Positions 12,361 through 29,919 are shown, counted from the stretch's first letter. The stretch is 64,000 nucleotides of DNA from Octopus sinensis (GCF_006345805.1 NC_043005.1:27838001-27902000); one strand, 5' to 3'. Translations and numbers: made by a program. Notes: generated by a model from the letters alone, not told the origin.

Positions 12361-13199
12361 TGAAAGTAGAGACTACAGCAAGGTTTTACTTCACAATAAC
12401 AATTTGTCTCTTAGTTGCGATAACTTAACGTTATCTTTGAGGATGGTTAAACACTGGATGGATAACTCTATGAGTGAAACTCTACTGTTTGCTCTATGCC
12501 AAAACAAATGAGAAAAGGTTGCGTTAATATTATTTAATCATAACTAACATAGAACTTGGAGCAAAGAGGTAACATGGTATGTCTACTCAATGGAAGCCAA
12601 AAATGGGAAAGGAAAAAGAAGAGTGACTTTGGTTACACAAAATCCGGACATATTAGAGACATTTAACTATCAGATATGAATTCAATAGGAAATGGTAATT
12701 CTCATTTCTGTAACAGAAGAAAACTTAAATTTGTTGTCTTGTATAATTAATCTGCTATAATCACTTTTGTCACGGAGAGTAATTAAATAATATGAGGTTT
12801 ATTATAAGCTATCAAGTGGTATGTTTGGTAAAATCCATGGTATTTTCACCTTTGAAACAAATAGAGACTTCAAATAGAGCATCAAAGAGCATTTCCTTGA
12901 AGTGGTTGGGATTTGGTGGCTAGACAGATGTAAAGGAACATTATTTACATTATTTACATTTGATGGATATTTGTCCTCATCTTTGTTGTTAACACAACGT
13001 TTCGGCTGATATACCCACCATGTAAAACCTTGTGTTAACAACAAACAAGATGAGGACAAATATCCATCAAATGTAAATAAGGTAAATAATGTACATAATT
13101 CCTCATCTCTTAACTATAGAGCTATATTATCTAATTGGTACGGAGCTGACATTAGTCTTCAATGGAGACATATAGAGAAACTCCATCAAAAACTAGCCC

Positions 13200-16059: not shown

Positions 16060-18746
16060 CAAAATATATTTTAAATTGTATGGTGCCTCAACTTAAGTAC
16101 CTTATTCATCTGAATCTAAGTTTTTACTGAACTCTTACATATATATATATATATATATATATAGTTGAAATTTACAGAAAAACAAAAGACAAAAACAGAT
16201 GTATCAGTTTGACACTCAGGAAGGTGAGAAAGTCTTTTGCATTTCGAACCTATGCTCTTCAACAGAAAGGCGCGTAAAGAAATAAACAGAAAGAGAATAA
16301 AAAACTTTTGGAGATAGCAGTCAATCATGATGTGTGTGTGTATACATACATACATACATGTGTGTGTGTCTGGGTGTCTAAACAAATTACTTTTTTATTT
16401 AATTCAGGGGATGATAGGTTCAAACAAGCTGTGTCCAATCACTTTGAATAAAGTACTCAACGAGATAAGTAAGGATTAATAAACATTTAATCCATAACCA
16501 TTAGTTTAACAAAATATATTTTGTTTCACCTATGGCTAGCTAAGCTTGAACTTGTCTCCAAGCTGTAATCAGTCAACTTAATTATAGTCGTCTGAATTAG
16601 CTTAAATGTTAATGAAGGTAGCAATCCATCTGAACATTTCTGCCCAAGAAGTATTACTATCCTATCCCAGAAAATGATATTTCACTCATCCGCCTCATAT
16701 CATCAGTATGGCAAAACTGCTGTGTCCTGTACCATATCAGATTTTCAGACGTATAACTAAGCAAAAAGCTAGAGTCTCAATTCAATAGAAACTTGATGAC
16801 AAGTTAACACAATTCAGTTTTGCTTGTTCTGCAGTAATTAATAGAATTTGAATGCATTAATTAGCTATAGGACCAATTAAAGCTCATACTGATCAGTGTT
16901 CCCAGACTATAATAATTTTGAGAAGGAAACAAATAATGGAAATATTTGATGTGTTGAGCATAGTGCAATGGAAATATTCGCATTTTGAAGAAGGAGTTTT
17001 TCGCCCACGATGACTTGTTTCAAACTACATTAAAAGATAGTCGTTTTCAGGTTTAGAATGAGTAAATTAAAGCTTTCCTTCAAGGGAAATAACTCATAAT
17101 AGACCAGATACTTACGGTTCAAGGGATTTAATTCTTATTGCTAAATCGATTAATTGAAGTTGATTTGATATGTAGAAACGATTCGGTGATATCTATAGTA
17201 CATGCATTGTATGTATGTATGTATGTATGTGTGTATTTCGCCAGACGAAATGCCGCTAAGTATTTCGCCCGGCGCGCTAACGTTTCTGCCAGCTAATTAA
17301 TAAATCACTCACACAGTATTAAAGGGAGGTAACTAACATAAGCCACTCTCCAATGTTGTGAGGTTCCAGGTTTGTGTTTGTTTAAATTATTTCTGTATTT
17401 ATTTCTCTGTTTTTGTTTTCCGAAGTAAATTTACGCAAAAGCAGTGAATATTGTTTATTGAACATGGCAGTAGATTTAAAGACATATTTCTAAACATTTC
17501 TAGCCATGAATATCTGAAATTAACCAAGTTGTTAATGTAAGCATTTCTTCCAGTTCCTGTAATTTTCTGTTTTTCTTTTGTTCGAATGAATGAAACAAGA
17601 TTTTTCTTTACATCGACCCAGTATCTCAGATGGAGAATTATTGTTAGACTGTGTGATGTTCATGCCTTTCTCAACGACGATACAAATTAGACATAAATGA
17701 AGTAAAGGGATTCCAACGGAGGAACTGAAATAATATCAGACTCAACACTTTCTCTCAAACTTCGATCAGTCTCATAAAATTTCCAATAATTGATATTTAT
17801 ATAAAGTGATTTAAAACTCTTCATAAGCTTTTTACCCATTGACTTCGTGCATTTCGCCTTTTTACCTCCTTACGTACTAAAATACAGAAATAGTAGATCT
17901 TCATATATATTTCCACCATATTTACTCGTTTATAAGTCACGCCTCTAATTAAGTGTTAAATATTTATTTGTTTATAAATTTTGTATATTTTATAATAAGC
18001 TGCGATCAGGAATAAATTATTTATTCCATGGCATGGAAACCTTCACCTCTAGAGAGTATATTAACCCTAGTTGAGAGTTACCGATATTAAGGAATTACAT
18101 CATAAATAAATATTGGAGGCTGGTTTTAAGATTCCACCATAGTTTAATTTGCTTAAATGTGTTAATTGAAAGCTATATCAGTTAAGAGAAAGCTATGAAT
18201 CTGGTCAAGTGTTAAGCTGAGACCAAGTTTTAAACAGAGGTCTTAGGTTTACATGTATTTCCTTTCTACTTGTGTATCTGTTCTTTCTCTAAATATAATC
18301 TACCTCGCCTTGAACTTTCTTTTTCTCTCTCTCTTGTGTGTGTGTATATATATATATGAGAGTGTGTGAGTATAACACATGGCTTTAATATTCAAAATAT
18401 GTTTCATGAAATGTTATATTTGACAATAACATATTTGTTCATTCTTAATATATTATTCTGACAGATGAGAGCATGGATATTTCATTGATGTGATTTTATG
18501 TTCTTGGAGGACATATCCTCCCATTAGACTACAGGAGTTCATAACACATCACATAAAGAGCAAAGTTGTTTTCCAATGAAGGAAAGCAAAAATGATGAGA
18601 TATTCATGCAGAACATCTTAATACATTATTGTGTGGACTCTTGCTGTTCTGGCTGTTTATTCAACTGTACCCCATGAATTTATATCGTATTTAACGACTT
18701 GTTGCACATATTTTTTTTCTTCTTACAGAAATCTGTGATTGTTAGA

Positions 18747-21700
18747 ATGGTACAAAAAAACACCGTTGCCTGTTTGTTCTTGATCATCACACTTCTACAA
18801 CTCATTCTTCAGACTTCTTCAAAAGAATATGTCTTCAGACAGTATAAATTCAGGAAAAAGCGAGATGTATGTATTTAAAATAAACCATTGCCTTTCTAAC
18901 TTTGGGTGAGCAACAGTAAAATGTAGGGGGAACAGCAGATTATAGGAATGGTGTACATCATAACAAACCAGATACTGTATGGTTTTGCATGTTTGTGAAG
19001 CTGGCCAATGAGGAAATAAATACCAGTAATATAACAAGGGTTTTTCAATTTACTGAAGTTCTTGCTTTCTACTAACTTGCTGTGCTGCACTTAAATCTAT
19101 CAAAGGGTACATATTTTGTCAACCTTGGTAGGACAAAAGGCAAAGATCATCTCAGATTTAAACTTGGGACATAAACAAATCCAAACAGTTTATCTGATTT
19201 TCTACTAACAATAAATGAAATCGAAATCAAATTCGATTACTAGAATCCGTGCTAGTGGAGCACTAAGAGTACCATCCGAGCGTGATTGTTGCCAGAGGAA
19301 CAAGCTGGCCTCCATGCCGATGGCACGTAAAAAGCACCATTCGAGCGTGATCATTACCTGCGTCGCCTTACTGGCACATGAAAAGAACATTCAAGCAAGG
19401 TCGTTGCCAGTGCTGTGGGACTAGTTCCTGTGCAGGTTACACATAAAAAGCATCATTTGAGCATGGCCTTCACCAGTACCGTCTGACTGGCCCTCGTGCC
19501 TGTGGCATGTAAAAGCACCCACTACACTCTAAAAGTGGTTGGCATTAGGAAGGGCATCCAGCTGTAGAAACTCTGCCAGATCAGATTGGAGTCTGGTGCA
19601 GCCATCTGGTTCGCCAGACCTCGGTCAAATCGTCCAACCCATGCTAGCATGGAAAGCGGACATCCTAAAGTCCCAATAGACATCCCTCTCTTTTGCCAAA
19701 AACTTCTCACACATCTGCTTTACTGCAAATATTTGATCTGCTCACTCCCTTCCACTCTTAAAACCACACTGTTCCCCTCCTAGTACACTCTCTGTCTGGT
19801 TCCTTACCTGAACAACCAGAATTCTCCCATACAGTTTACCAACCACACACAAAAGACTTAGACTCCTAAAATTTCCACACTCACATTTATCCCCTTTTCT
19901 CTTGTACAGTGGCACTATACAGGCACTGCACCAGTCCTTTGGTACTCCTCTAGCCATATAACAAACATTCATGGGCATCACAAACCATTCAATCACTGTC
20001 ACTCCTTTCTTTAGGCATTCCACTGTACACCCATCTGTATCTGGTGCTTTCCAGTTTGCCATCTTCTGCAAGGATTCCCTTACCTCCTCCCTTCCAATTG
20101 CACCATAGTTCCATTCCCCAGTAACAGGCATTCTCTTCTCTCCTCCTACAGCCACTATACTTGCCTCCCTAGACAACTCCACATTTATTAAATCACTAAA
20201 ATACTCTGCCCATCTCCTTTGTAATATCTTCACTTCCTTTCAACAAATTTCTATTTACATCCTTCGCCTTTTCTTCAACCATCTTCCTTACCCTCTGTAC
20301 CTCTTTCCAAAACATCTTTTCATTTCTTACAAAATGTTCACTCAACTTTTTTCTGAACCTTTCATTTGCCTCCCCTTTCACTACCCTCACCACTCCCTTT
20401 ACTCTCCTCCTCACTTCTCAGTAGCAATCATAAGCCCCTCTATCCCTCTTCTGCAACCACTCTTCAAAGGTCCTTTTCTTCCTTGCCACCGCTTCCCTTA
20501 TCTGCTCATTCCACCACTCACTACCTTTCCTCACACCCATTCCAACCACTCTTGTGCCACATGCCTCAGAGGCACATCTCATTACTGCCTCTCTAAAGGC
20601 TTCCCACTCCTCCTCCACATCTCCCATCTCTTAACCTGTTCATATTCACCTCTCAGTTCCTCTACATACTCCTGCTCCTTCTCTCTCCTATCCAGTTCAC
20701 ACACCTTCACGACCTCGCTCCTCCTTGTCACTCATCTAGCATTCCATTTTGAGCATACTTTTAACTTACCCTGTACTAAGAAGTGATCTGAAACTCCTCC
20801 ACCTCTCTTTACATGTACATCCACCAACCTTCCTACCACTCTCTTATCAATTAATACACAATCCATCAAGGCCCTATCCACTACTGTTCCTCCCTCCACC
20901 CTCTGAACTTATTCTCCCACTTTTTGAAAAGACTATTCCCCACCACCAACTCCTGCTCCATACACATTTGCAACAACCTCCTTCCACTCTCATTCCAACC
21001 AAGAACTCCCCTATTTTCCTCCTACATTTCCTACTTCCTCATTTCCCACTCGTTCATTCAAATCACCCAACACCCCCGCATAGCCACTTTTCCCCACCCT
21101 ATCAACGCTTTAATGTTGTTTTTGTTGTTGTTTTGTCAGGACAAACACTATCGACATGCTAAAAGTCAGTGTGAGACGTCATCTCATTGCCAGAAGTTGC
21201 TTACACGTCCCTTGGATCACACCCGCTGTGTACGACTGTGTATTTCTGAGAAATGTTACAATGAATTGTATGGCCATGATGAAGTGAGTAGTTTTAAGTT
21301 TTGCTTTTGTTAAATTTGTACCTTGTGGAATTAATAGCATCATTCATCATCATCATCATCATCACTGAAAAAGTTTGATTGAGAAACTCGCTTCCCAACC
21401 ATGCTGTTTCGGGGTCAGTCCTACTGTGTGGCACATTGGACATGTGTCTTCTCCTATGGTCCTGGTCAAACCAAAACCTTGTGAGTGGATTTAATAGAAA
21501 GAAACTGAAAGAAGCTCATTGTATGTGTGTGTGTGTGTGTGTGTATCCTTGTTTTGATGCCCCATGAAGGTTGTGAGTGAGTGTCATTGTCATTCGTTTC
21601 CATCTGCCATGGGGAAATATTAGTTTGCTTGGAAACAGGTGAAGATTGGCAACAGGAAAGGCATCCAGCCATAGAGAATCTGCCTCAGTGAATTCTATCT

Positions 21701-23529
21701 GACCCATGCAGGCATAGATGACTGGACGTTAGAACAATGATAATGAGAACACTCCCAGCAGTAGATCCCTATCCGTTGTTAGGAAATTGTTCTTTAGCTC
21801 CAGACCAATCCTGATGCTGCAGACTTATGATCAAAACATTCAATTCCAGGATTTTATATGAAGATTTAGCTGCTTTTTTTAACAGGTCAAATGATCATAT
21901 TCAATGGCGTTTGAAAGATTTACTGTATTTGACGGTCTGAAAGGCTCAAGAGTATATTAAACATACTCCAACTTTGGCAGCACATAATCAAGGAACAAAG
22001 CGTTTTTAGTGCCTTAAATTGTATAATATGAGCCCAACTTCACATATAGGACCCAGGATATTCTAAATATTCTCTGTTTAATACTCATATGTAAGGAAGT
22101 AAGACAGGCTTCTTTCTTTTTACATCATTTTTACCCATAATTACGCAGAGAAGGTTCTATCTCAGCTGATAGGGATCCTTCTTACTGTTCGCTTCTAAAC
22201 TGTAGAAGTAATTTATAATTTGTCAGACAAACTGAAACAGAGTTATGTCCCTTGCTCTGCTATACACTATAATGGCTGCCGTTTCAATTTATGATATCGA
22301 GGTTGGGTCGGTTTGGTACTTCAGGCTCAGCTTTTTAAAAATCGTCGTTACAACGTCTTTTTTCCATATTTGTGTGCGCCAGATGGAATTCGTTGAAACA
22401 AAATTTTTTGCGGTTGAATTGCCTGTCCTGTGGCCTCTCCTCACATGTTTCCAAGCCAAATAATACTTTCTCAAAATTGGACATATTTTCATGGAAAACT
22501 AAGAAAACAACATATACATACATATGACAGATTTCATTCTCTTATTGCTTACCAAATCCACTCACTAGGCACATCAGATGACACTTGCTGAAGGTGCTAA
22601 GCAGTGGAACTGAACCCATGTGGTTTGGAAGTGAAGTTCTTAAGCAGACAGCCATGGCTGCATCCATTTGTGTTTCTTTGGCAGCTTCTAAAAAATATTT
22701 AAGTATAATTGCTAGGGCAAGAAAAACGGTAGATTTTCCTTTAAATGACTAGAAGTGGCCAAATGTGAAGGGTTGTGGGTTTGAATGGCTACAATGCTAG
22801 GGTCACAGATTTGATTCTAGGATCAGATGACACACTGTATCTTTGAGCAAGATATTTCATGTTGCTCTATTACATTTAGCTGATAATGAGTACCAGTGGC
22901 ATGTGGAAGTTAACCCTGTAAAGGACTGGTACCCTGTTCAGTGGGGTTATGTATTGTCAGCCTAAACCGTTTGAAAAAAAAAACATAAGCTTTGACCCCC
23001 ATGTACTTGTAGACTTGAGGAAAAGAAGAGAGAATGACAGTCAGAGAAGAGAAACTGTCTGGACGAAACCCATGTCCAACATTGGAGAACTATTGACATC
23101 TCACTTTGTAATTCATGAAATAATGAGATTTTAATCTCTTCAACCTTATTTAACATCCACAATCCTTGCTGGCAGGGATTGAAAACAGTTTGACAGGGGG
23201 TCGTGGGTCCAAAGATCACATCATATCCAGCATCTACTTTGGCAATTTTTCTACTCTGCCAAAGGGTTGGGTGCCCTTCCTGAAGTTAACTGCTTTGTAA
23301 CAAATCTTTAAATTCTTGATTTTAATGAAAACAATTTTGGACAAGTGATATTGCATATATTTATGGATATAAACAGGATTACTGTTTAATTTAGCATTTC
23401 TTGAAAGTAATTCTTGTTATAATCTTAATTATTTTCTTTCTGTTCCAGTTGGAAGAAGGTGAAATTGATGTTCGATTGAATTCCTTCAAAGGTTGTTACT
23501 TCTTAGATTTACGAAGTAGAGAGATGTGA
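18747..23529 (+). CDS. Small secreted peptide precursor of unknown family (66 aa), two coding exons
   Basis: Acceptor ttttttttcttcttacAG before 18729, ATG at 18747, exon to 18866 = MVQKNTVACLFLIITLLQLILQTSSKEYVFRQYKFRKKRD, donor GTATGT. Acceptor attttctttctgttccAG then 23449-23529 = LEEGEIDVRLNSFKGCYFLDLRSREM*. Phase 0/0 join; AATAAA at 23560-23565. Confidence 0.68.
19720..21090 (-). mobile_element. Degenerate RTE-clade LINE ORF2 fragment
   Basis: SEWWNEQIREAVARKK, FWKEVQRVRK, RWAEYFSDLIN, GKAP-like WKAPDTDG, VPKDWCSACIVPLYKRKGDKCECGNFRSLSLL, GEQCGF; frameshifts and stops. Confidence 0.85.
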
Positions 23530-23559
23530 ACATTCCTTTTTAATGATTTCTAGTTTTGT

Positions 23560-23565
23560 AATAAA
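23560..23565 (+). terminator. Polyadenylation signal of the peptide-precursor gene
   Basis: AATAAA 30 nt after the TGA, followed by a GT-rich downstream tract. Confidence 0.5.
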
Positions 23566-24392
23566 GCTGAATCAAGCATTTAAACATTGGTGAGTATGAA
23601 GTTGTTATTTTAAGGAGATTTAGGGGTTGGCATTTTTTCTTTTGCTTTGTCAGGGGGAAGGCTGTACCCATGGTTTTTTACACAGCCTATAATATTGACA
23701 GGAGCAGGGCTGGAAGACATTGGTCAAACTGAAAACCTGGCTGAAATTCTTGCAACAGAATAGACTTCATTAAAGGCAACCAAAGATGATGTGGTGTTAA
23801 ATCCAGGAGGACAGAGTTAATGAGGATCAGGGTGTCATCATAAACACATAAAAGCAGAGTTTATGAATTAAGATATTTATTCAATTAAAAGAAAGAAATA
23901 TTTAAACCATCACAGATATTCAAGGAAAGTTTAGGTCAGTGTTTCTATATTGGGGTCCACATAAGATTTTGGTATTAAAATTTATCTACAATACATTGCT
24001 ATTTCTATAATACACAAAATATTTTTAATTTTGTCAACAATTCCTAATGTTATAAAAAAAATGCATTAGGGTTTTTTTTTTTATACATCAAATGTTTATT
24101 AGGGTCTAATAGAGTAAAATAGGAATAAAAGGGGATCCAAAGATGTTTTGAGGACCCTGATTTAGATATAACAGAGTAAAGAAATCAGGACATGATCATT
24201 GAGGCCAGTTCTTTCATGCCTTTAGAATAAATTAAACTTTTTCTTATTTTTCATGGGCTTTGGTTTAAGCATTAGACAGGGGTGGACTGAGCCATCAATC
24301 AATTGGGCAAGGCCCGAAGTCCCACAGTCTACATGTTAACTCTGTTGATATCAGTGCTAAGGGACCTGGTAAACAGTTATGCCAGAGAGCCC

Positions 24393-24620
24393 TTAACCCT
24401 GTCGTTACTGTATCTATTTTGAGATACTCTGTTTCTTTCAATTACTTTAAATATAACAAAGAATTTAGTAAATTAACTTAAGTTATCATTCAGCTAGTGT
24501 TAGGAACATAAGTTGTGACTAAGATTTGGTGGAAGATTTTAATTCAAAACTTATGAAAACAAGACATTTATACTACAGAGCTAGAGGCAGTTTCAGCTGG
24601 GTTGGTAACGAAAGGGTTAA
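24393..24620. mobile_element. piggyBac-like MITE, second copy
   Basis: TTAA-flanked CCCT...AGGG termini; internal sequence similar to 1829-2061. Confidence 0.6.
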
Positions 24621-25899
24621 CACTCTCAGTCTGCCCCTGGCATTAGACATTGAGCCACAAAGTCTGCAAGTTCAAACCTTACTAGTGGTGTAAAATAACT
24701 TGTTGTCAGTTTACATGACTGCAAACGGGTATCGCTTCAATGGAAGGTGAAAACAAACAGCTTCAGTAATTCCACAGAGCAGCCGTGATAAATAATGGAG
24801 TGAATTTGTTGGTCTCAGAGAAATCCAAAGTTATCATTTCACCAATGATTATGTTGTGTGATGAATTCTAAGACGGGTGGCATTTCAGTGAGTTTATTCT
24901 GTTCATTTGTGATGATAATTTAATTTTAGCACAAGGCCAGCAATTTTAGTAGGATTGGTTTTAGTCAACTTCATTGATTGCAGTACTTGATTGGTTCTTA
25001 CTTCATCCCTGAAAGGATGAAGGCTAAGTCAACCATGGCAGCATTTGAACTCAAAATTCACACAGCCAAAAGACATGTCAAGTTTTTTGTCTAATATGCT
25101 AAAGATTCTGCCAGCTCGCCTTGATGGGTCTTCTCAAACACGACATTATGCCAAAGGTCTCCGTCATTGCCTCTGTGAGGCCCAACACTTGAAAGGAACT
25201 CAGCCACTTTGGTTCTGTGAGGCCCAACGCTTGACAGGTCCTCTCAAGCATAGCACATTGCCAAAGGTCTCATTTGATATTTTGTTATATAATCACAAGG
25301 CCTGAAATTTTGGAAGAGGAAGGAGTCAGTTATATTGACCCCATTACATAACTGTTACTTTATTTCATCAACCCGAAAAAGATAAAAGGCAGAGATTATA
25401 GTCAGGGTTGGAACTCAGAAACAGGAAAAATACTAAGAATTGTCTTATGCTCTGACAATTCTGCCACTCCTCTACTTTGTGGTAAGAAGATTGTATCCCA
25501 ACCACATGGTTCCAGGTTCAGGTCCAGTGCATGACACCAAAGCCTTGTGAGTGGGTCTGGTTGATGGAAACTGAAAGAAGCTCATATATATATATGTACA
25601 CACACACACACACGTGTCTTTGTGTTATTCCCCTCCATTGCTTGACAACCAGTATTGGTGTTTATGTTCCCATAACTTGGCAGTTTGGCAAAAGAAATTG
25701 ATAGAATAAATATACCAGGCTTAAAAAATAAAAAGTTCATTCATTTCACTGAAAATTCTTCAAGCCAGTGCCCCAGCATGGCTGCAGTCTAATGAGTGAA
25801 GCAAGTAAAAGATATAAGAGCTGTGTTCCTCCATCTTGTGCTGTCCTCAGATCATGATTTTCAAGTAATTCATCTAAAGAAACCAAATAACAGTGAATT

Positions 25900-26690
25900 C
25901 ATATGATTTATTCATAGAATGAAACAAGAGGGGCTCTCCCTGTTGAGTGAAGTGGTAAGCCAGGAGTTGGGGTTATGTCTTGAAGTCATGGCTGTCAGCA
26001 GAGGAGAAGGAACTGAGTGTAGGGGGGGAGGTGGAGTTTGGTGCAGGTAGGGTAGGATAGGAGAAGTTGAGACAGTGGTGTTTGTCTGTAGGTCTATAGT
26101 GGATGGAGGTAGTAAGAGAAGAGTGGTAGATAGTGACAGGAATGTCAAGAAACTTGATGAAGATACTGGAGACAGATCAGGAGGATTTGAAGACGAGACA
26201 AAAGAGAGGAAGACATCAAGATATTAGCAGGCAAGTGAGGGCCAGTACCATAGTCAGTGTAATGAGCATATAGCTCGGGACTGGGACCAGTAAGCTGTGA
26301 GAATATTTGTGCGTCAATATAACCAATGAACAGGTTTGCATAGTTGGGGCCAATTCTCTTTCCCATGGCCTCGCCTGAGACTTGATAAAATTCACCTGGA
26401 AATGAGAAGCAGTTAAGAACTGAGGAGGGTAGAGATGTTAGGTTGAGGATGAAGATCAAGAAAGTGTTTTAAAGGAATGAGGAGGGATGACAGTGTAGAT
26501 GAATTTAGGTCAAGGATGAACAGGAGTCTAGAGGGGCCAGGAAGAAAGGAGAAAGAATTGAATTGACAAAGAGGCATGGTTGGTGTTGTGACTGTGAAAG
26601 GAGGGAAGCCACTAGGGGTGTGAGGACAAGGCTGAGACATTTGGAGTTGAGATTGGTGGGGGGGAAATATGGTGTAGCCAGGGTTGTTGG
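25900..26690 (-). mobile_element. Penelope-like element reverse transcriptase fragment
   Basis: FYQVSGEAMGKRIGPNYANLFIGYIDAQIFSQLTGPSPELYAHYTD matches the PLE-type G.AMG...GP.YANLF.GY....YGRYIDD region. Confidence 0.7.
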
Positions 26691-26924
26691 GTTCAAGGAT
26701 TTACATATATATATCTTTTCTATTACTTGTTTCAGTCATTCGACTGTGGCTATGCTGGAGCACCACCTTTAATCGAGCAAATTGACCCCAGGACTTATTC
26801 TTTGTAAGCCTAGTACTTATTCTATCGGCCTCTTTTGCCGAAGCCACTAAGTTACGGGAACTTAAACACACCACCATCGGTTGTCAAGCGATGTTAGGGG
26901 ACAAACACAGACACACAAACATAT

Positions 26925-28052
26925 CATCATCATCATTGTTTGACCGTGGTCGAGACAATGGAATTTACCATGTTGCGCCAGACTTCACGGTCCATCATAG
27001 CATTACGGAGGTCCTGTTGCTGGATGCCTGTATCCCTGGAGATTACATCAGGGTAGGAGAGTGTGCGCCCTCTGGTGTTGAGTAGATGGCTTCCAGAGGA
27101 GAAGAGTAGAAATTACTTCTTTTTCAGCTCTACAACAATGTCCAGCAAACTAGACTCTCCTACCCTTCACAAGAGATGACACAGGTGGTAATTTCCCATA
27201 TATTTGCATTTTAGTTGGATGGCGCCTCCACGAGAGATTTTGAGCTCTCATAAGGAGGCGAGTGTAGGTTCCATCCAACCGCCTCTCAAGCTTCTTTGAT
27301 AACGTCCAGGTTTCTGAGCCATATAGTAGGATTGGTTCGACTGTGGCTTTGAATATTTCAAGTTTGAAGTCTCTACTTAGATTTGATGACCAGATCTTAT
27401 GCATGTCATTACAGGCTGACCAGGCCATACCCTTTCTAGTTAGAAAGTCTTTTCCAGATGATGATATGTATGACCCAAGATATTTATAATCAGAAACCAT
27501 ATTTAAAGGTGCACTGTTGAGAGTGTGGATGATGCAATCACTGTTGGACAGGCACTTGTTTATGTATTCAGTTTTGGTCTCATTAAGGTAAAGACCTACA
27601 CAATTTGAGGCTTGTTCAAGAGATTGTAAAAGAGACTGGGCATTGGAGAGAGAATCACTGATAAGAGCGATGTCGTCAGCAAAGTCAGTGTCTGTCAAGT
27701 ACTCAGCTGGGTGTCTGGAACTTCTTCTTGGTTTTATTTCAAAGCCCTTGCCAGAGATGGTATCAACTGACATACGTAGCACATAATCAACAACAATGAT
27801 GAAAAGAAATGGAGCGAGTGTGTCTCCCTGCAGTATTCCGGCCTCGATCGAGAAAGATGATGTTTCTCCATCAGGGGTTAAGATGGTTGAAGACGTATCT
27901 GTGTAGAGGACCTTGATGGCAGAAATAATTTTGTCTGGTATCCCATAGAGCTTAAGGATTTCAAACATCTTGCACCTATCCACAGAATCGAACGCTTTAG
28001 AAAAGTCTACAAATACCATTGCAAGATCGCGATTAAATGCTTTTGATTCTTC
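26925..28052 (-). mobile_element. Young 5'-truncated RTE-type LINE (RT + 3' end) inserted into a SINE
   Basis: About 300 open codons with VDFSKAFDSV, GILQGDTLAPFLF, DFADDI, YKYLGS, LLYGSETW; premature TAG near 27150; (GAT)n tail; AACATAT repeated at 26918-26924 and 28053-28059 as candidate target-site duplication. Confidence 0.88.
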
Positions 28053-29919
28053 AACATATATACGATGGGCTTCTTTCAGTTTCTGCCTACCAAATCTACT
28101 CACAAGGCTTTGGTCAGCCCAAGGCTATAGTAGAAGACACTTGCCCAAGGTGCCACACAGTGAGAATGAATCCGGAACTATGTGGTTGGTAAGCAAGCTA
28201 CTTACCACACAGCCACTCCTGTGCTTACATATATATATAGTCATGTAACATCCTTTGTCTATGCTGGCATGGGTTGGAAGGGTTTGACCAGCGATGGCAA
28301 GCTGGAAGGCTGCACCAGACTGTCTGATTTGGCATGATTTTCTACGGCTGGATGCCCTTCCTAACACCAACCACTCCAAGACTGTAATGGGTACTTTTAC
28401 ATGCCATCACCATGGGTGTCAATTTGTGTGACACCAGTATCTGTCACGACTGCGATTTTGTTCAGCTTGATGAGTCTTCTCCAATGCAACATTATGCCAA
28501 AGGTCTTGGTCATTGCCTCTGTGAAGCCCAACATTCGAAAGGAACTTGGCTAGATGGATCTTCTCAAGCACAGCACATCGCCACAGGTCACGGTCACTAA
28601 TCATTGCCTCTGTAGGCTCAAAGTTCAAAGCTCATGCTTCACCACTTCGTCCCATGTCTTTCTGGGTTTACTTCTACCACAGGTTCTCTCCATAATTAGA
28701 GATTGGCACTTCTTTACACAGCTGTCCTTGTCCTTACACATCACATAACCATATCAGCGCAGTGGTCTCTCTTGCAACACCACATTTGATGCCTCTTACG
28801 CTTAACTTTTCTCTGAAGATGCTTACACTCTGTCAAACATGCACACTGACACTGCACATCAAGCGAAGCACTCTGGCTTCATTTCTTTCAAAACCACAAA
28901 CCCAACAACCCTGGGTTGAATAGATGTGTGTAAAAGGCAGTACCTCTAGATGTGTAGCAGTTCTGTTTCATATAGGAATAACATAAAAGCGAGCACACAA
29001 GCAGTAAGATTGCAGGAGACAAAACAGGGATGCTTTATCACCTTGATTTATTGTCCAGCTTTTTATGAAGTAGAGGTATAAAAGAGAGAGAGAGAGAAAA
29101 GATATTTACATTAACAAACAATAAAATGACATTCAGTCGACACAAAGACTCACGCATGCACCTGCACAGTGATGCAACATTACAGAACAGAACCAAATAA
29201 TAAAATAAAATTAAATGCAGATAATCAGTTATAATGTAATAAAAATTTAGTATATTACATCTATCCTCATTTATTACTGACCTGGGATAACGACACAATT
29301 GTGAACCATGTTCCACATACCATGAATTGATCTATAATAACATGGATCAGTGGTCAAAGATTCTGCTTGGATCACAAAAGCAAGCCCCAGCAACCATACA
29401 CAATGTTTGGGATAACTAGGGATCCCAGAACAAAACCTATTTTCCTCATGTTCTATTATTCATTAATCGCTGATTCATTTAACTTTTTTTTTTAAACCGA
29501 AAACCTCTCATAAATGAGGATAAATATAAAATACGATATGATAAAATACATGGTTATTATAAATTCTGACCATCACTGACCACTGAAATTGTAACTTGTA
29601 TTTCATGACAGTTTCTGTGTTCTAAGGCAAAATGGAATATGACAAGTTACATTTTAAATGGGCATGATAGCCACTACTTCATTAAGTGCTTTCACCAAAT
29701 TGATACTTTGCCATTTGTGACCTCCCTGTTATTTTTTTAAAAACATGTTCTTCTCCAAGCTATAATTAGGCCTGGTATATGTGTGTGTGAGAGAAGTTTG
29801 TATGTTTGGGTTGTGTTTTTGTAATTAATGTCAGAATGTAACAAAGACGATGGAAGTGAGAAGAGTCTCTGTGTGAGTTGACTTAAAAGGAGAGAGAAAC
29901 GAGAAGCAGTTAAAATGTT

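What the first reader, a model, noticed from the sequence alone, without database searches (positions are those of the whole stretch)
18729..23565. Unrecognised 66-aa secreted peptide precursor gene between the vitellogenin-like gene and SMC2
Seen: the spliced ORF MVQKNTVACLFLIITLLQLILQTSS-KEYVFRQYKF-RKKR-DLEEGEIDVRLNSFKGCYFLDLRSREM* has canonical splice sites, a phase 0/0 join and AATAAA 30 nt after the stop. Both exons are below the ORF-track size cutoff. Established: signal peptide plus R-x-K-R is prohormone/furin precursor architecture. Inference: processing gives a basic 10-mer and an acidic 27-mer with a single Cys (possible disulfide dimer). I do not recognise it as a known molluscan neuropeptide, venom or pheromone peptide. 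The acceptor before the ATG implies an unlocated non-coding first exon. Extra internal exons cannot be excluded.
Basis: partly seen in the sequence, partly recalled or inferred. Interest (0 to 1): 0.76.

Follow-up and report, generated by a model that had tools for sequence, protein, structure and literature searches.

The report
Annotated octopus DUF4787 gene, mis-modelled
The two exons are real, but a 144-base middle exon was missed: the gene is the already annotated Octopus sinensis LOC115215874, which encodes a 114-residue secreted cysteine-rich protein of an old, uncharacterised animal family (Pfam DUF4787), not a new 66-residue peptide precursor.

Summary
The direct 18866→23449 join is wrong, though. 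A 144-nt phase-0 exon at 21140-21283 lies between them. With it the product is 114 aa, an exact match to RefSeq XP_036361742.1/XP_036361743.1, "uncharacterized protein LOC115215874 [Octopus sinensis]". It scores 77.9 bits on Pfam PF16029 (DUF4787; cutoff 27).

The same three exons, with the same junctions, occur in O. bimaculoides and Argonauta. dN/dS is 0.16 overall and 0.06 for the mature part. A cephalopod cDNA contig carries the uninterrupted ORF.

The family has six invariant Cys and a near-invariant D-x-LEEGEIDVRLNSFKGC motif. Named members include a sponge, a jellyfish, insects, a hemichordate and a crinoid, all "uncharacterized". AlphaFold gives a confident all-helical model with no match in PDB.

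The RKKR site holds in all 47 gastropod, bivalve and cephalopod sequences. It is RKKK in a chiton, a non-consensus basic patch in a sponge and a crinoid, and absent in insects. Prohormone processing is therefore possible but not supported as the family's mechanism.

Verdict: a real gene, already known, wrongly modelled; the function of the family remains open.

The parts
12676..12694 (+). Candidate far-upstream exon end with an in-frame ATG (ATGAATTCAATAGGAAATG|gtaatt = MNSIGN + first base of the Val codon), used by the 129-aa O. vulgaris isoform. The exon's 5' limit and the transcription start are unknown.
   Evidence: O. vulgaris CAI9728866.1 begins MNSIGNVVNKSVIVRMVQ.... There is an exact 6-aa match with a GT donor in the right phase. 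It was not found within 10 kb upstream in O. bimaculoides. The mapping is an inference from another species' annotation.
17529..17536 (+). 8-nt micro-exon TTGTTAAT (ag|TTGTTAAT|gtaagc), which completes 'VVN' in the 129-aa isoform.
   Evidence: This is the only match to the required pattern in 12.6-18.76 kb; I estimate about 0.01 expected by chance. The sequence and both splice sites are identical in O. bimaculoides. No RNA evidence could be checked here.
18729..18866 (+). ATG exon: 18 nt of 5' leader plus CDS 18747-18866 (residues 1-40: signal peptide 1-25, KEYVFRQYKF, RKKR, D).
   Evidence: The acceptor TACAG| and donor |GTATGT/GTAAGT are conserved in O. bimaculoides and Argonauta.
18747..18821 (+). 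Signal-peptide coding segment (MVQKNTVACLFLIITLLQLILQTSS).
   Evidence: Hydropathy. An N-terminal hydrophobic segment is visible in every row displayed from alignment A1. AF2 gives helix 2-22. SignalP was not available.
18852..18863 (+). Codons for R36-K37-K38-R39 (proprotein-convertase-type motif).
   Evidence: [KR]KKRDD occurs in 47/47 gastropod, bivalve and cephalopod sequences and in none of 25 insect-type sequences. The chiton has RKKK, the sponge KRKPK, the crinoid KKKPK.
18867..21139 (+). Intron 1 (2273 nt). It is enlarged by an insertion of about 2 kb (19036-21108) relative to O. bimaculoides.
   Evidence: blastn collinearity. Minus-strand ORFs at 19742-20899 look retrotransposon-like to me, but they have no Pfam hit.
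21140..21283 (+). Missed internal coding exon (residues 41-88; five of the six conserved Cys).
   Evidence: It is homologous to residues 41-88 of all family members. There are identical junctions in O. bimaculoides (L010 10662-10805) and Argonauta (L011 10940-11083). The cDNA L002 alignment block starts exactly at 21140.
21284..23448 (+). Intron 2 (2165 nt). 21354-23334 is an insertion relative to O. bimaculoides. Retaining it reads ...DEVSSFKFCFC*, as in the 97-aa O. vulgaris isoform.
23449..23529 (+). Last coding exon (residues 89-114, LEEGEIDVRLNSFKGCYFLDLRSREM, plus TGA).
23561..23566 (+). AATAAA polyadenylation signal, 31 nt after the stop.
   Evidence: It is conserved in O. bimaculoides; Argonauta has a TA repeat there instead.

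Best explanation
The locus is the Octopus sinensis gene LOC115215874. It has three coding exons, 18747-18866, 21140-21283 and 23449-23529, preceded by at least one upstream exon. It encodes a 114-residue pre-protein of the DUF4787 family (Pfam PF16029).

Shown here: the gene structure, its identity with the RefSeq protein, family membership, conservation under purifying selection, and the wide animal distribution of the family.

Inferred:
1. Residues 1-25 act as a cleaved ER signal peptide, so the 89-residue mature protein enters the secretory pathway and is probably secreted. No KDEL-like tail or second hydrophobic segment is present.
2. The mature protein folds into a compact bundle of short helices. 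Three disulfides formed by the six invariant cysteines would lock it.
3. It acts as a folded protein (a ligand or binding factor) rather than as a source of small peptides. The near-invariant acidic loop and helix D-x-LEEGEIDVRLNSFKGC would be its conserved interaction surface.
4. The RKKR motif is the local form of an old basic patch that follows a conserved aromatic stretch ([FY]x[FY]xx[FY]x[FY]). In gastropods, bivalves and cephalopods it happens to fit the convertase consensus and might be cut. Cutting is not required by the family as a whole.
For: - Exact match of the three-exon translation to XP_036361742.1/XP_036361743.1. The locus maps to O. sinensis CM016867.1, between a PF01347 gene and an SMC gene.
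- Pfam DUF4787: 77.9 bits against a cutoff of 27. The 66-aa model reaches only 24.9 bits and matches only profile positions 44-63.
- In the 72-sequence alignment, C51, C57, C70, C74, C79, C104, Y84, D87, L89, E90, G92, E93, D95, S100, K102 and G103 are invariant.
- The same three exons with canonical sites occur in O. bimaculoides and Argonauta. dN/dS is 0.16 overall and 0.06 for the mature part. Against Argonauta, dN is 0.106 and dS is saturated.
- In Argonauta only the three exons align by blastn.
- The cephalopod cDNA contig L002 has an uninterrupted 115-aa ORF. Its alignment to the window falls in three blocks on the three exons, and the block starts match the acceptors of exons B and C.
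- AF2: mean pLDDT 88.5, all-helical, helices 37-52, 55-58, 64-75, 77-83, 93-96 and 98-113.
- Single N-terminal hydrophobic segment.
- The family has 841 representatives at 50% identity with E<=1e-3. Named members include a sponge, a jellyfish, an acoel, a priapulid, crustaceans, insects, a hemichordate and a crinoid.
- Basic-patch comparison.
Against: - No direct RNA-seq or peptide evidence from O. sinensis could be examined.
- The signal peptide was judged by hydropathy and the -3/-1 rule, not by SignalP.
- The function is unknown for every member: no paper, no solved structure and no fold match. The 'folded ligand or binding protein' mechanism is therefore inference only.
- Invariance of [KR]KKRDD across 47 mollusc sequences is stronger than a mere basic patch needs. 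This keeps convertase processing alive as an option.
Confidence: 0.9

Rival explanations
1. The corrected 114-aa protein is a true prohormone. After signal-peptide removal, a furin/PC-type convertase cuts after R36-K-K-R39, and carboxypeptidase trims the basic residues. This releases a conserved aromatic decapeptide (KEYVFRQYKF) and a 75-residue, six-Cys chain (DDKHYRH...). One or both of these would be the active hormone.
For: - The RKKR↓D fits the R-x-K/R-R consensus.
- [KR]KKRDD is kept in all 47 gastropod, bivalve and cephalopod sequences examined, across deep divergences.
- The motif lies just after a signal peptide and before the Pfam domain, which starts at residue 41.
- The N-terminal stretch EY.F[KR].Y.[FY] is itself conserved.
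Against: - The site is not ancestral. The chiton has RKKK, the sponge KRKPK, the crinoid KKKPK and insects K[DE][ST]xKNE. Yet the aromatic stretch before it is conserved in all of them, as expected for part of the mature fold.
- AF2 places the motif at the start of a confident helix: block pLDDT is 91 for residues 31-40, and the helix begins at residue 37. It is not in a disordered linker.
- There is no amidation Gly, no repeated peptide copies and no peptidomic record found.
Confidence: 0.25
2. One reading: the main product is the 66-aa, two-exon protein (exon 21140-21283 skipped). It would yield a basic 10-mer and an acidic 27-mer with one Cys.
For: Skipping the 144-nt exon keeps the frame, so such an isoform is formally possible.
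Against: - None of the five annotated octopus isoforms retrieved here (RefSeq O. sinensis x2, O. vulgaris x3), nor either Argonauta model, lacks the exon.
- The exon is the best-conserved block against Argonauta (82.7% over 162 nt), and it carries five of the six invariant Cys.
- The 66-aa product falls below the Pfam threshold (24.9 bits against a cutoff of 27).
- The cDNA L002 contains the exon.
Confidence: 0.03
3. The ORF is the upstream cistron of a bicistronic or read-through transcript. Its main role would be regulatory, controlling translation of a downstream gene, rather than making a secreted protein.
For: In other molluscs a second same-strand ORF follows closely:
- L002: a 93-aa ORF with a hydrophobic, possibly membrane-spanning stretch, 60 nt after the stop.
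- L008/L009: an AlkB-like ORF, 65 nt after.
- L005: a uracil-DNA glycosylase ORF, 430 nt after.
- Gigantopelta genome: a RIO-kinase-like gene, 151 nt after.
In the window a GTGAGT donor-like site follows the AATAAA at 23591.
Against: - In the three octopods the downstream neighbour is SMC2 on the opposite strand, only 1.9 kb away in O. bimaculoides.
- No homologue of the L002 second ORF is in the window.
- The donor-like site is GTGAAT in O. bimaculoides and absent in Argonauta.
- Strong purifying selection on the amino-acid sequence across animals argues for a functional protein.
Confidence: 0.03

Closest known systems
Pfam PF16029 (DUF4787), e.g. O. bimaculoides LOC106876277 and Argonauta hians GAB1609786.1
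   Same: The corrected product is full length and collinear with them: 95% identical to O. bimaculoides and 83% to Argonauta. It shares the six invariant Cys, the D-x-LEEGEIDVRLNSFKGC motif, the N-terminal signal peptide and the three-exon structure.
   Different: Nothing of substance. The O. sinensis introns are about 2 kb longer each because of insertions, and there is an extra, non-conserved Cys9 in the signal peptide.
Insect DUF4787 proteins, e.g. Aedes aegypti AAEL005183 and the Gryllus entry that UniRef names 'Accessory gland protein'
   Same: About 33-40% identity, the same length, the same Cys pattern and the same C-terminal motif.
   Different: Insects lack the RKKR/KKKR motif (K[DE][ST]xKNE instead) and end in a basic tail (...GRTRN...RQRP).
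Convertase-processed neuropeptide or prohormone precursors (general architecture)
   Same: A signal peptide followed by an R-x-K-R motif, and a short conserved peptide before the site.
   Different: The site is not conserved outside gastropods, bivalves and cephalopods. There is no amidation signal and there are no peptide repeats. The bulk of the protein is a conserved, folded six-Cys domain.
Six-Cys helical arthropod neurohormones (CHH/ITP/MIH family, eclosion hormone); a resemblance recalled from memory
   Same: Small, secreted, helical, with three presumed disulfides. In CHH a short precursor-related peptide and a dibasic site precede the hormone.
   Different: No Pfam hit other than DUF4787, no PDB sequence hit and no Foldseek hit with E<1. 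The Cys spacing and motifs differ. I do not file it as a member.

Membership tests
Pfam PF16029 (DUF4787) | Score above the curated gathering threshold over the whole domain | tested here: met
77.9 bits against a cutoff of 27; residues 41-104 match profile positions 1-63 of 63.
Pfam PF16029 (DUF4787) | Six conserved Cys and the D-x-LEEGEID...SFKGC motif | tested here: met
   C51, C57, C70, C74, C79, C104, D87, L89, E90, G92, E93, D95, S100, K102 and G103 are invariant in 72 sequences, including the window protein.
Pfam PF16029 (DUF4787) | Roughly 100-125 aa pre-protein with an N-terminal hydrophobic signal segment | tested here: met
   114 aa. The only hydrophobic stretch is residues 7-17 (KD 3.16). 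The alignment shows the same layout in the rows displayed.
Pfam PF16029 (DUF4787) | Orthology with annotated members at a syntenic locus | tested here: met
   Exact match to O. sinensis XP_036361742.1. The same SMC2-convergent position is seen in O. bimaculoides and Argonauta.
Convertase-processed prohormone or neuropeptide precursor | Cleavable N-terminal signal peptide | tested here: met
   Hydropathy and small residues at -1/-3 (T-S-S|K). SignalP was not available, so this is a rule-based judgement.
Convertase-processed prohormone or neuropeptide precursor | Dibasic or R-x-K/R-R site conserved among orthologues | tested here: inconclusive
   Kept in 47/47 gastropod, bivalve and cephalopod sequences. 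It is RKKK in a chiton, KRKPK in a sponge, KKKPK in a crinoid, and absent in 25 insect-type sequences.
Convertase-processed prohormone or neuropeptide precursor | Site in an exposed, flexible linker between products | tested here: inconclusive
   AF2 puts residues 37-52 in a helix, and block pLDDT for residues 31-40 is 91. The model gives no solvent-exposure data.
Convertase-processed prohormone or neuropeptide precursor | Processed peptides detected; neuroendocrine or glandular expression | not testable with these tools
   No peptidomic or expression data are accessible. Literature searches for the sequences found nothing.
CHH/ITP/MIH neurohormones (Pfam PF01147) and eclosion hormone | Profile or structural match to the family | tested here: not met
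   hmmscan at E<=10 lists only DUF4787 and a chance Nodulin_late hit. Foldseek against PDB gives a best E of 3.5.

The most novel reading that the evidence does not exclude
DUF4787 is an ancient secreted animal signalling protein that has never been studied. In gastropods, bivalves and cephalopods its old basic patch has become a true convertase site. Octopus would then release a conserved aromatic decapeptide (KEYVFRQYKF) plus a 75-residue, three-disulfide helical chain, which would be a previously undescribed hormone or ligand pair.
Probability: 0.15. Interest if true: 0.6.

Novelty: already known. Interest (0 to 1): 0.2.

Why it matters
For the scan, this is a correction. The "unrecognised peptide gene" is an annotated RefSeq gene, and its true product is nearly twice as long. 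It shows that in-frame exon skipping can make an incomplete model look complete.

Biologically, what remains of interest is the family. DUF4787 is small and secreted, and its C-terminal motif barely changes across the animals compared here (IDIRLSSF in the sponge, LEEGEVDVRVTSF in the crinoid). No vertebrate appeared among the names I saw. No publication, solved structure or fold match was found. Any functional assignment for it would be new, but nothing in this window gives a special handle on that question.

Tried and rejected
- PDB sequence search with the family profile: best E 0.61, not meaningful.
- Foldseek of the AF2 model against PDB (best E 3.5) and BFVD (best E 1.9): no fold match.
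- Literature searches found nothing: DUF4787, PF16029, IPR031985, the LOC and XP identifiers, AAEL005183, and sequence strings.
- Conserved synteny with SMC2 as an explanation for two sea-slug proteins named "structural maintenance of chromosomes protein": rejected. No SMC gene lies within 10 kb in Plakobranchus, Physella, Pecten or Gigantopelta. The adjacency holds only in octopods.
- A downstream second cistron in octopus: no homologue of the L002 second ORF in the window, and the post-AATAAA donor-like site is not conserved.
- Intronic snoRNA, tRNA or other RNA: none found between 12 and 30 kb.
- Pfam on the retrotransposon-like minus-strand ORFs in intron 1: no hit.
- An EF-hand reading of DELEEGEIDVRL: positions 3 and 12 do not fit the canonical loop (my own comparison from memory), and Pfam gives no EF-hand hit.
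Full report
**1. What is in the sequence**

- a polypyrimidine tract and CAG acceptor ending at 18728;
- an ATG at 18747;
- an open frame to ...AAG CGA GAT followed by gtatgt, so the exon ends at 18866;
- an acceptor ...ctgttccag ending at 23448;
- an open frame TTG GAA GAA ... ATG TGA ending at 23529;
- AATAAA at 23561-23566.

Joining the two pieces gives exactly the quoted 66-aa ORF.

**2. The join is wrong**

A protein search with the 66-aa ORF returned about 80 proteins of roughly 110-116 aa. Nearly all carry Pfam PF16029. The best was O. bimaculoides LOC106876277 at E=1e-25, but with only 54% identity over the full query. The hits have 48 extra residues between ...RKKRD and LEEGEID....

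Those residues are encoded in the window at 21140-21283. The exon is flanked by ttgttttgtcag| and |gtgagt, is 144 nt long, and is phase 0 at both ends. It lies inside a longer mechanical ORF, 20924-21313.

The three-exon CDS is 345 nt and translates to 114 aa. That sequence is an exact match to XP_036361742.1/XP_036361743.1, "uncharacterized protein LOC115215874 [Octopus sinensis]". The same CDS span (4783 nt) is annotated on O. sinensis chromosome CM016867.1. It sits between a PF01347 (vitellogenin-type) gene on the minus strand upstream and an SMC gene on the minus strand downstream. The gene is therefore neither unannotated nor 66 aa.

**3. Independent support for the three-exon model**

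- O. bimaculoides (L010) and Argonauta hians (L011) have the same three exons, with the same phase-0 junctions and canonical splice sites.
- Against Argonauta, blastn aligns only the three exons within the gene, plus SMC2 exons downstream. The middle exon is the strongest block.
- Nei-Gojobori estimates give dN/dS = 0.16 against O. bimaculoides (0.06 for the mature part). Against Argonauta, dN = 0.106 with saturated dS.
- A Logan contig from run SRR19578108 (L002, 1411 nt) carries an uninterrupted 115-aa orthologue (74% identity), as a spliced mRNA would. It aligns to the window in three blocks on the three exons, and the second and third start at or next to the acceptors of exons B and C (21140; 23447 against 23449).
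- O. vulgaris annotation has three isoforms: a 114-aa form; a 129-aa form with an N-terminal extension from upstream exons; and a 97-aa form that reads into intron 2 (...DEVSSFKFCFC*), exactly as the window does. None of them skips the middle exon.

**4. Upstream exons**

The TACAG acceptor before the ATG is conserved in all three octopods. The O. vulgaris 129-aa and Argonauta 129-aa models both read through it.

The O. vulgaris extension MNSIGNVVNKSVIVR can be mapped onto the window in three pieces:
- ATGAATTCAATAGGAAATG|gtaatt at 12676-12694;
- an 8-nt micro-exon, ag|TTGTTAAT|gtaagc, at 17529-17536;
- the exon starting at 18729.

The micro-exon and its splice sites are identical in O. bimaculoides. 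This mapping is an inference from another species' annotation. I could not check RNA reads.

**5. What the protein is**

- It scores 77.9 bits on Pfam DUF4787 against a cutoff of 27.
- In a 72-sequence alignment, six Cys (51, 57, 70, 74, 79, 104) and Y84, D87, L89, E90, G92, E93, D95, S100, K102 and G103 are invariant.
- The only hydrophobic stretch is N-terminal, with T-S-S before the predicted cut. This fits a cleaved signal peptide.
- There is no second hydrophobic segment, and the C-terminal tails vary without a KDEL-like pattern. Secretion is the likeliest fate; this is inference.
- AlphaFold2 with the alignment gives mean pLDDT 88.5 and pTM 0.71. The model is all-helical: helices 37-52, 55-58, 64-75, 77-83, 93-96 and 98-113. 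The acidic DELEEGE segment forms a loop of somewhat lower confidence.
- Nothing in PDB or BFVD resembles the model, and no PDB sequence is related.

**6. Distribution of the family**

An exhaustive profile search found 841 representatives (50% identity clusters) at E<=1e-3, and 213 at E<=1e-10. Named members include molluscs, many insects, crustaceans, a priapulid, a flatworm, an acoel, a jellyfish, the sponge Corticium, the hemichordate Ptychodera and the crinoid Antedon. All are labelled uncharacterised, except for one UniRef name, "Accessory gland protein" (Gryllus), and two evident misnamings. No vertebrate name appeared in the lists I could see, but I did not test that systematically. Full-text searches found no paper on the family.

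**7. The prohormone idea**

With the corrected model the RKKR motif (residues 36-39) remains. Cleavage there would give KEYVFRQYKF plus a 75-residue chain with six Cys, not a 27-mer with one Cys.

In favour: [KR]KKRDD is present in all 47 gastropod, bivalve and cephalopod sequences in the alignment.

Against:
- A chiton has RKKK-DD, the sponge KRKPK, the crinoid KKKPK, and the 25 insect-type sequences have K[DE][ST]xKNE.
- The aromatic stretch before the motif ([FY]x[FY]xx[FY]x[FY]) is conserved in all of these, which suggests it belongs to the mature fold.
- AF2 places the motif at the N-terminus of a confident helix.

I therefore read the motif as the local version of an ancestral basic patch that may or may not be cut. 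I put the true-prohormone reading at about 0.25.

**8. Mechanism**

I commit to the following, with shown and inferred steps kept apart.

Shown: the gene model, family membership, purifying selection and wide conservation.

Inferred: co-translational entry into the ER; signal-peptide removal after S25; formation of three disulfides in a small helical bundle; secretion; and action as a folded protein whose near-invariant acidic loop-helix (D87-C104) contacts a conserved partner.

The partner and the physiological role are unknown.

**9. Verdict**

It is wrong on product size, on Cys content, and on the gene being unrecognised. In terms of novelty it is already known: an annotated member of a Pfam family, albeit one with no known function.

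Noticed in passing
window 17529-17536: An 8-nt micro-exon (ag|TTGTTAAT|gtaagc) is needed to reproduce the N-terminal extension of the O. vulgaris 129-aa isoform. It is identical, with both splice sites, in O. bimaculoides.
   Followed up: partly
window 12676-12694: A candidate far-upstream exon, 6 kb before the main ATG, has an in-frame ATG (MNSIGN). It lies about 2.6 kb from the start of the divergently transcribed vitellogenin-like gene. It would put 15 residues in front of the signal peptide. It was not found within 10 kb upstream in O. bimaculoides.
   Followed up: partly
window 19036-21108, 21354-23334 and 24536-29017: Three blocks are absent from the collinear O. bimaculoides locus. They enlarge both introns (CDS span 4783 nt against 1101 nt) and the gap to SMC2 (6.4 kb against 1.9 kb). 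Minus-strand ORFs at 19742-20899 look like a decayed non-LTR retrotransposon to me, but they gave no Pfam hit.
   Followed up: partly
window 23586-23596: A strong donor-like site (TTG|GTGAGT) lies 25 nt after the AATAAA. It is GTGAAT in O. bimaculoides and is replaced by a TA microsatellite in Argonauta, so it is probably not used.
   Followed up: yes
L002 461-742; L008 562-1449; L009 481-1368; L005 1578-2414; L013 12393-13064: In other molluscs the DUF4787 ORF is followed closely, on the same strand, by a second and different ORF. These are a 93-aa ORF with a hydrophobic stretch (+60 nt), an AlkB-like dioxygenase (+65 nt), a uracil-DNA glycosylase (+430 nt) and a RIO-kinase-like gene (+151 nt, genome annotation). 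They could be bicistronic or read-through transcripts, or very tight gene packing. Physella has an AlkB-like gene divergent upstream. From memory, ALKBH2 and UNG are neighbours in human, which may hint at an old linkage group.
   Followed up: partly
L004 10001-10336; L012 10001-10345: In Physella and Plakobranchus the DUF4787 coding sequence is intronless. In the octopods, Pecten (3.8 kb span) and Gigantopelta (2.2 kb span) it is split.
   Followed up: no
proteins P0013 (Plakobranchus ocellatus) and P0036 (Elysia marginata): Two 114-aa DUF4787 proteins are named 'structural maintenance of chromosomes protein' in public records. No SMC gene lies within 10 kb in Plakobranchus, so this looks like an annotation-transfer error.
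   Followed up: yes
A PF01347 vitellogenin-type gene (1307 aa) is divergent from the DUF4787 gene, and an SMC gene (1200 aa; SMC_N and hinge domains) is convergent with it. The SMC adjacency is shared by O. bimaculoides and Argonauta.
   Followed up: partly
protein family (P0151 sponge, P0205 jellyfish, P0168 acoel, P0152 hemichordate, P0166 crinoid): DUF4787 is found across animals, with a C-terminal motif that changes very little from sponge to octopus. It has no literature, no solved structure and no fold match. No vertebrate member appeared in the lists seen.
   Followed up: partly
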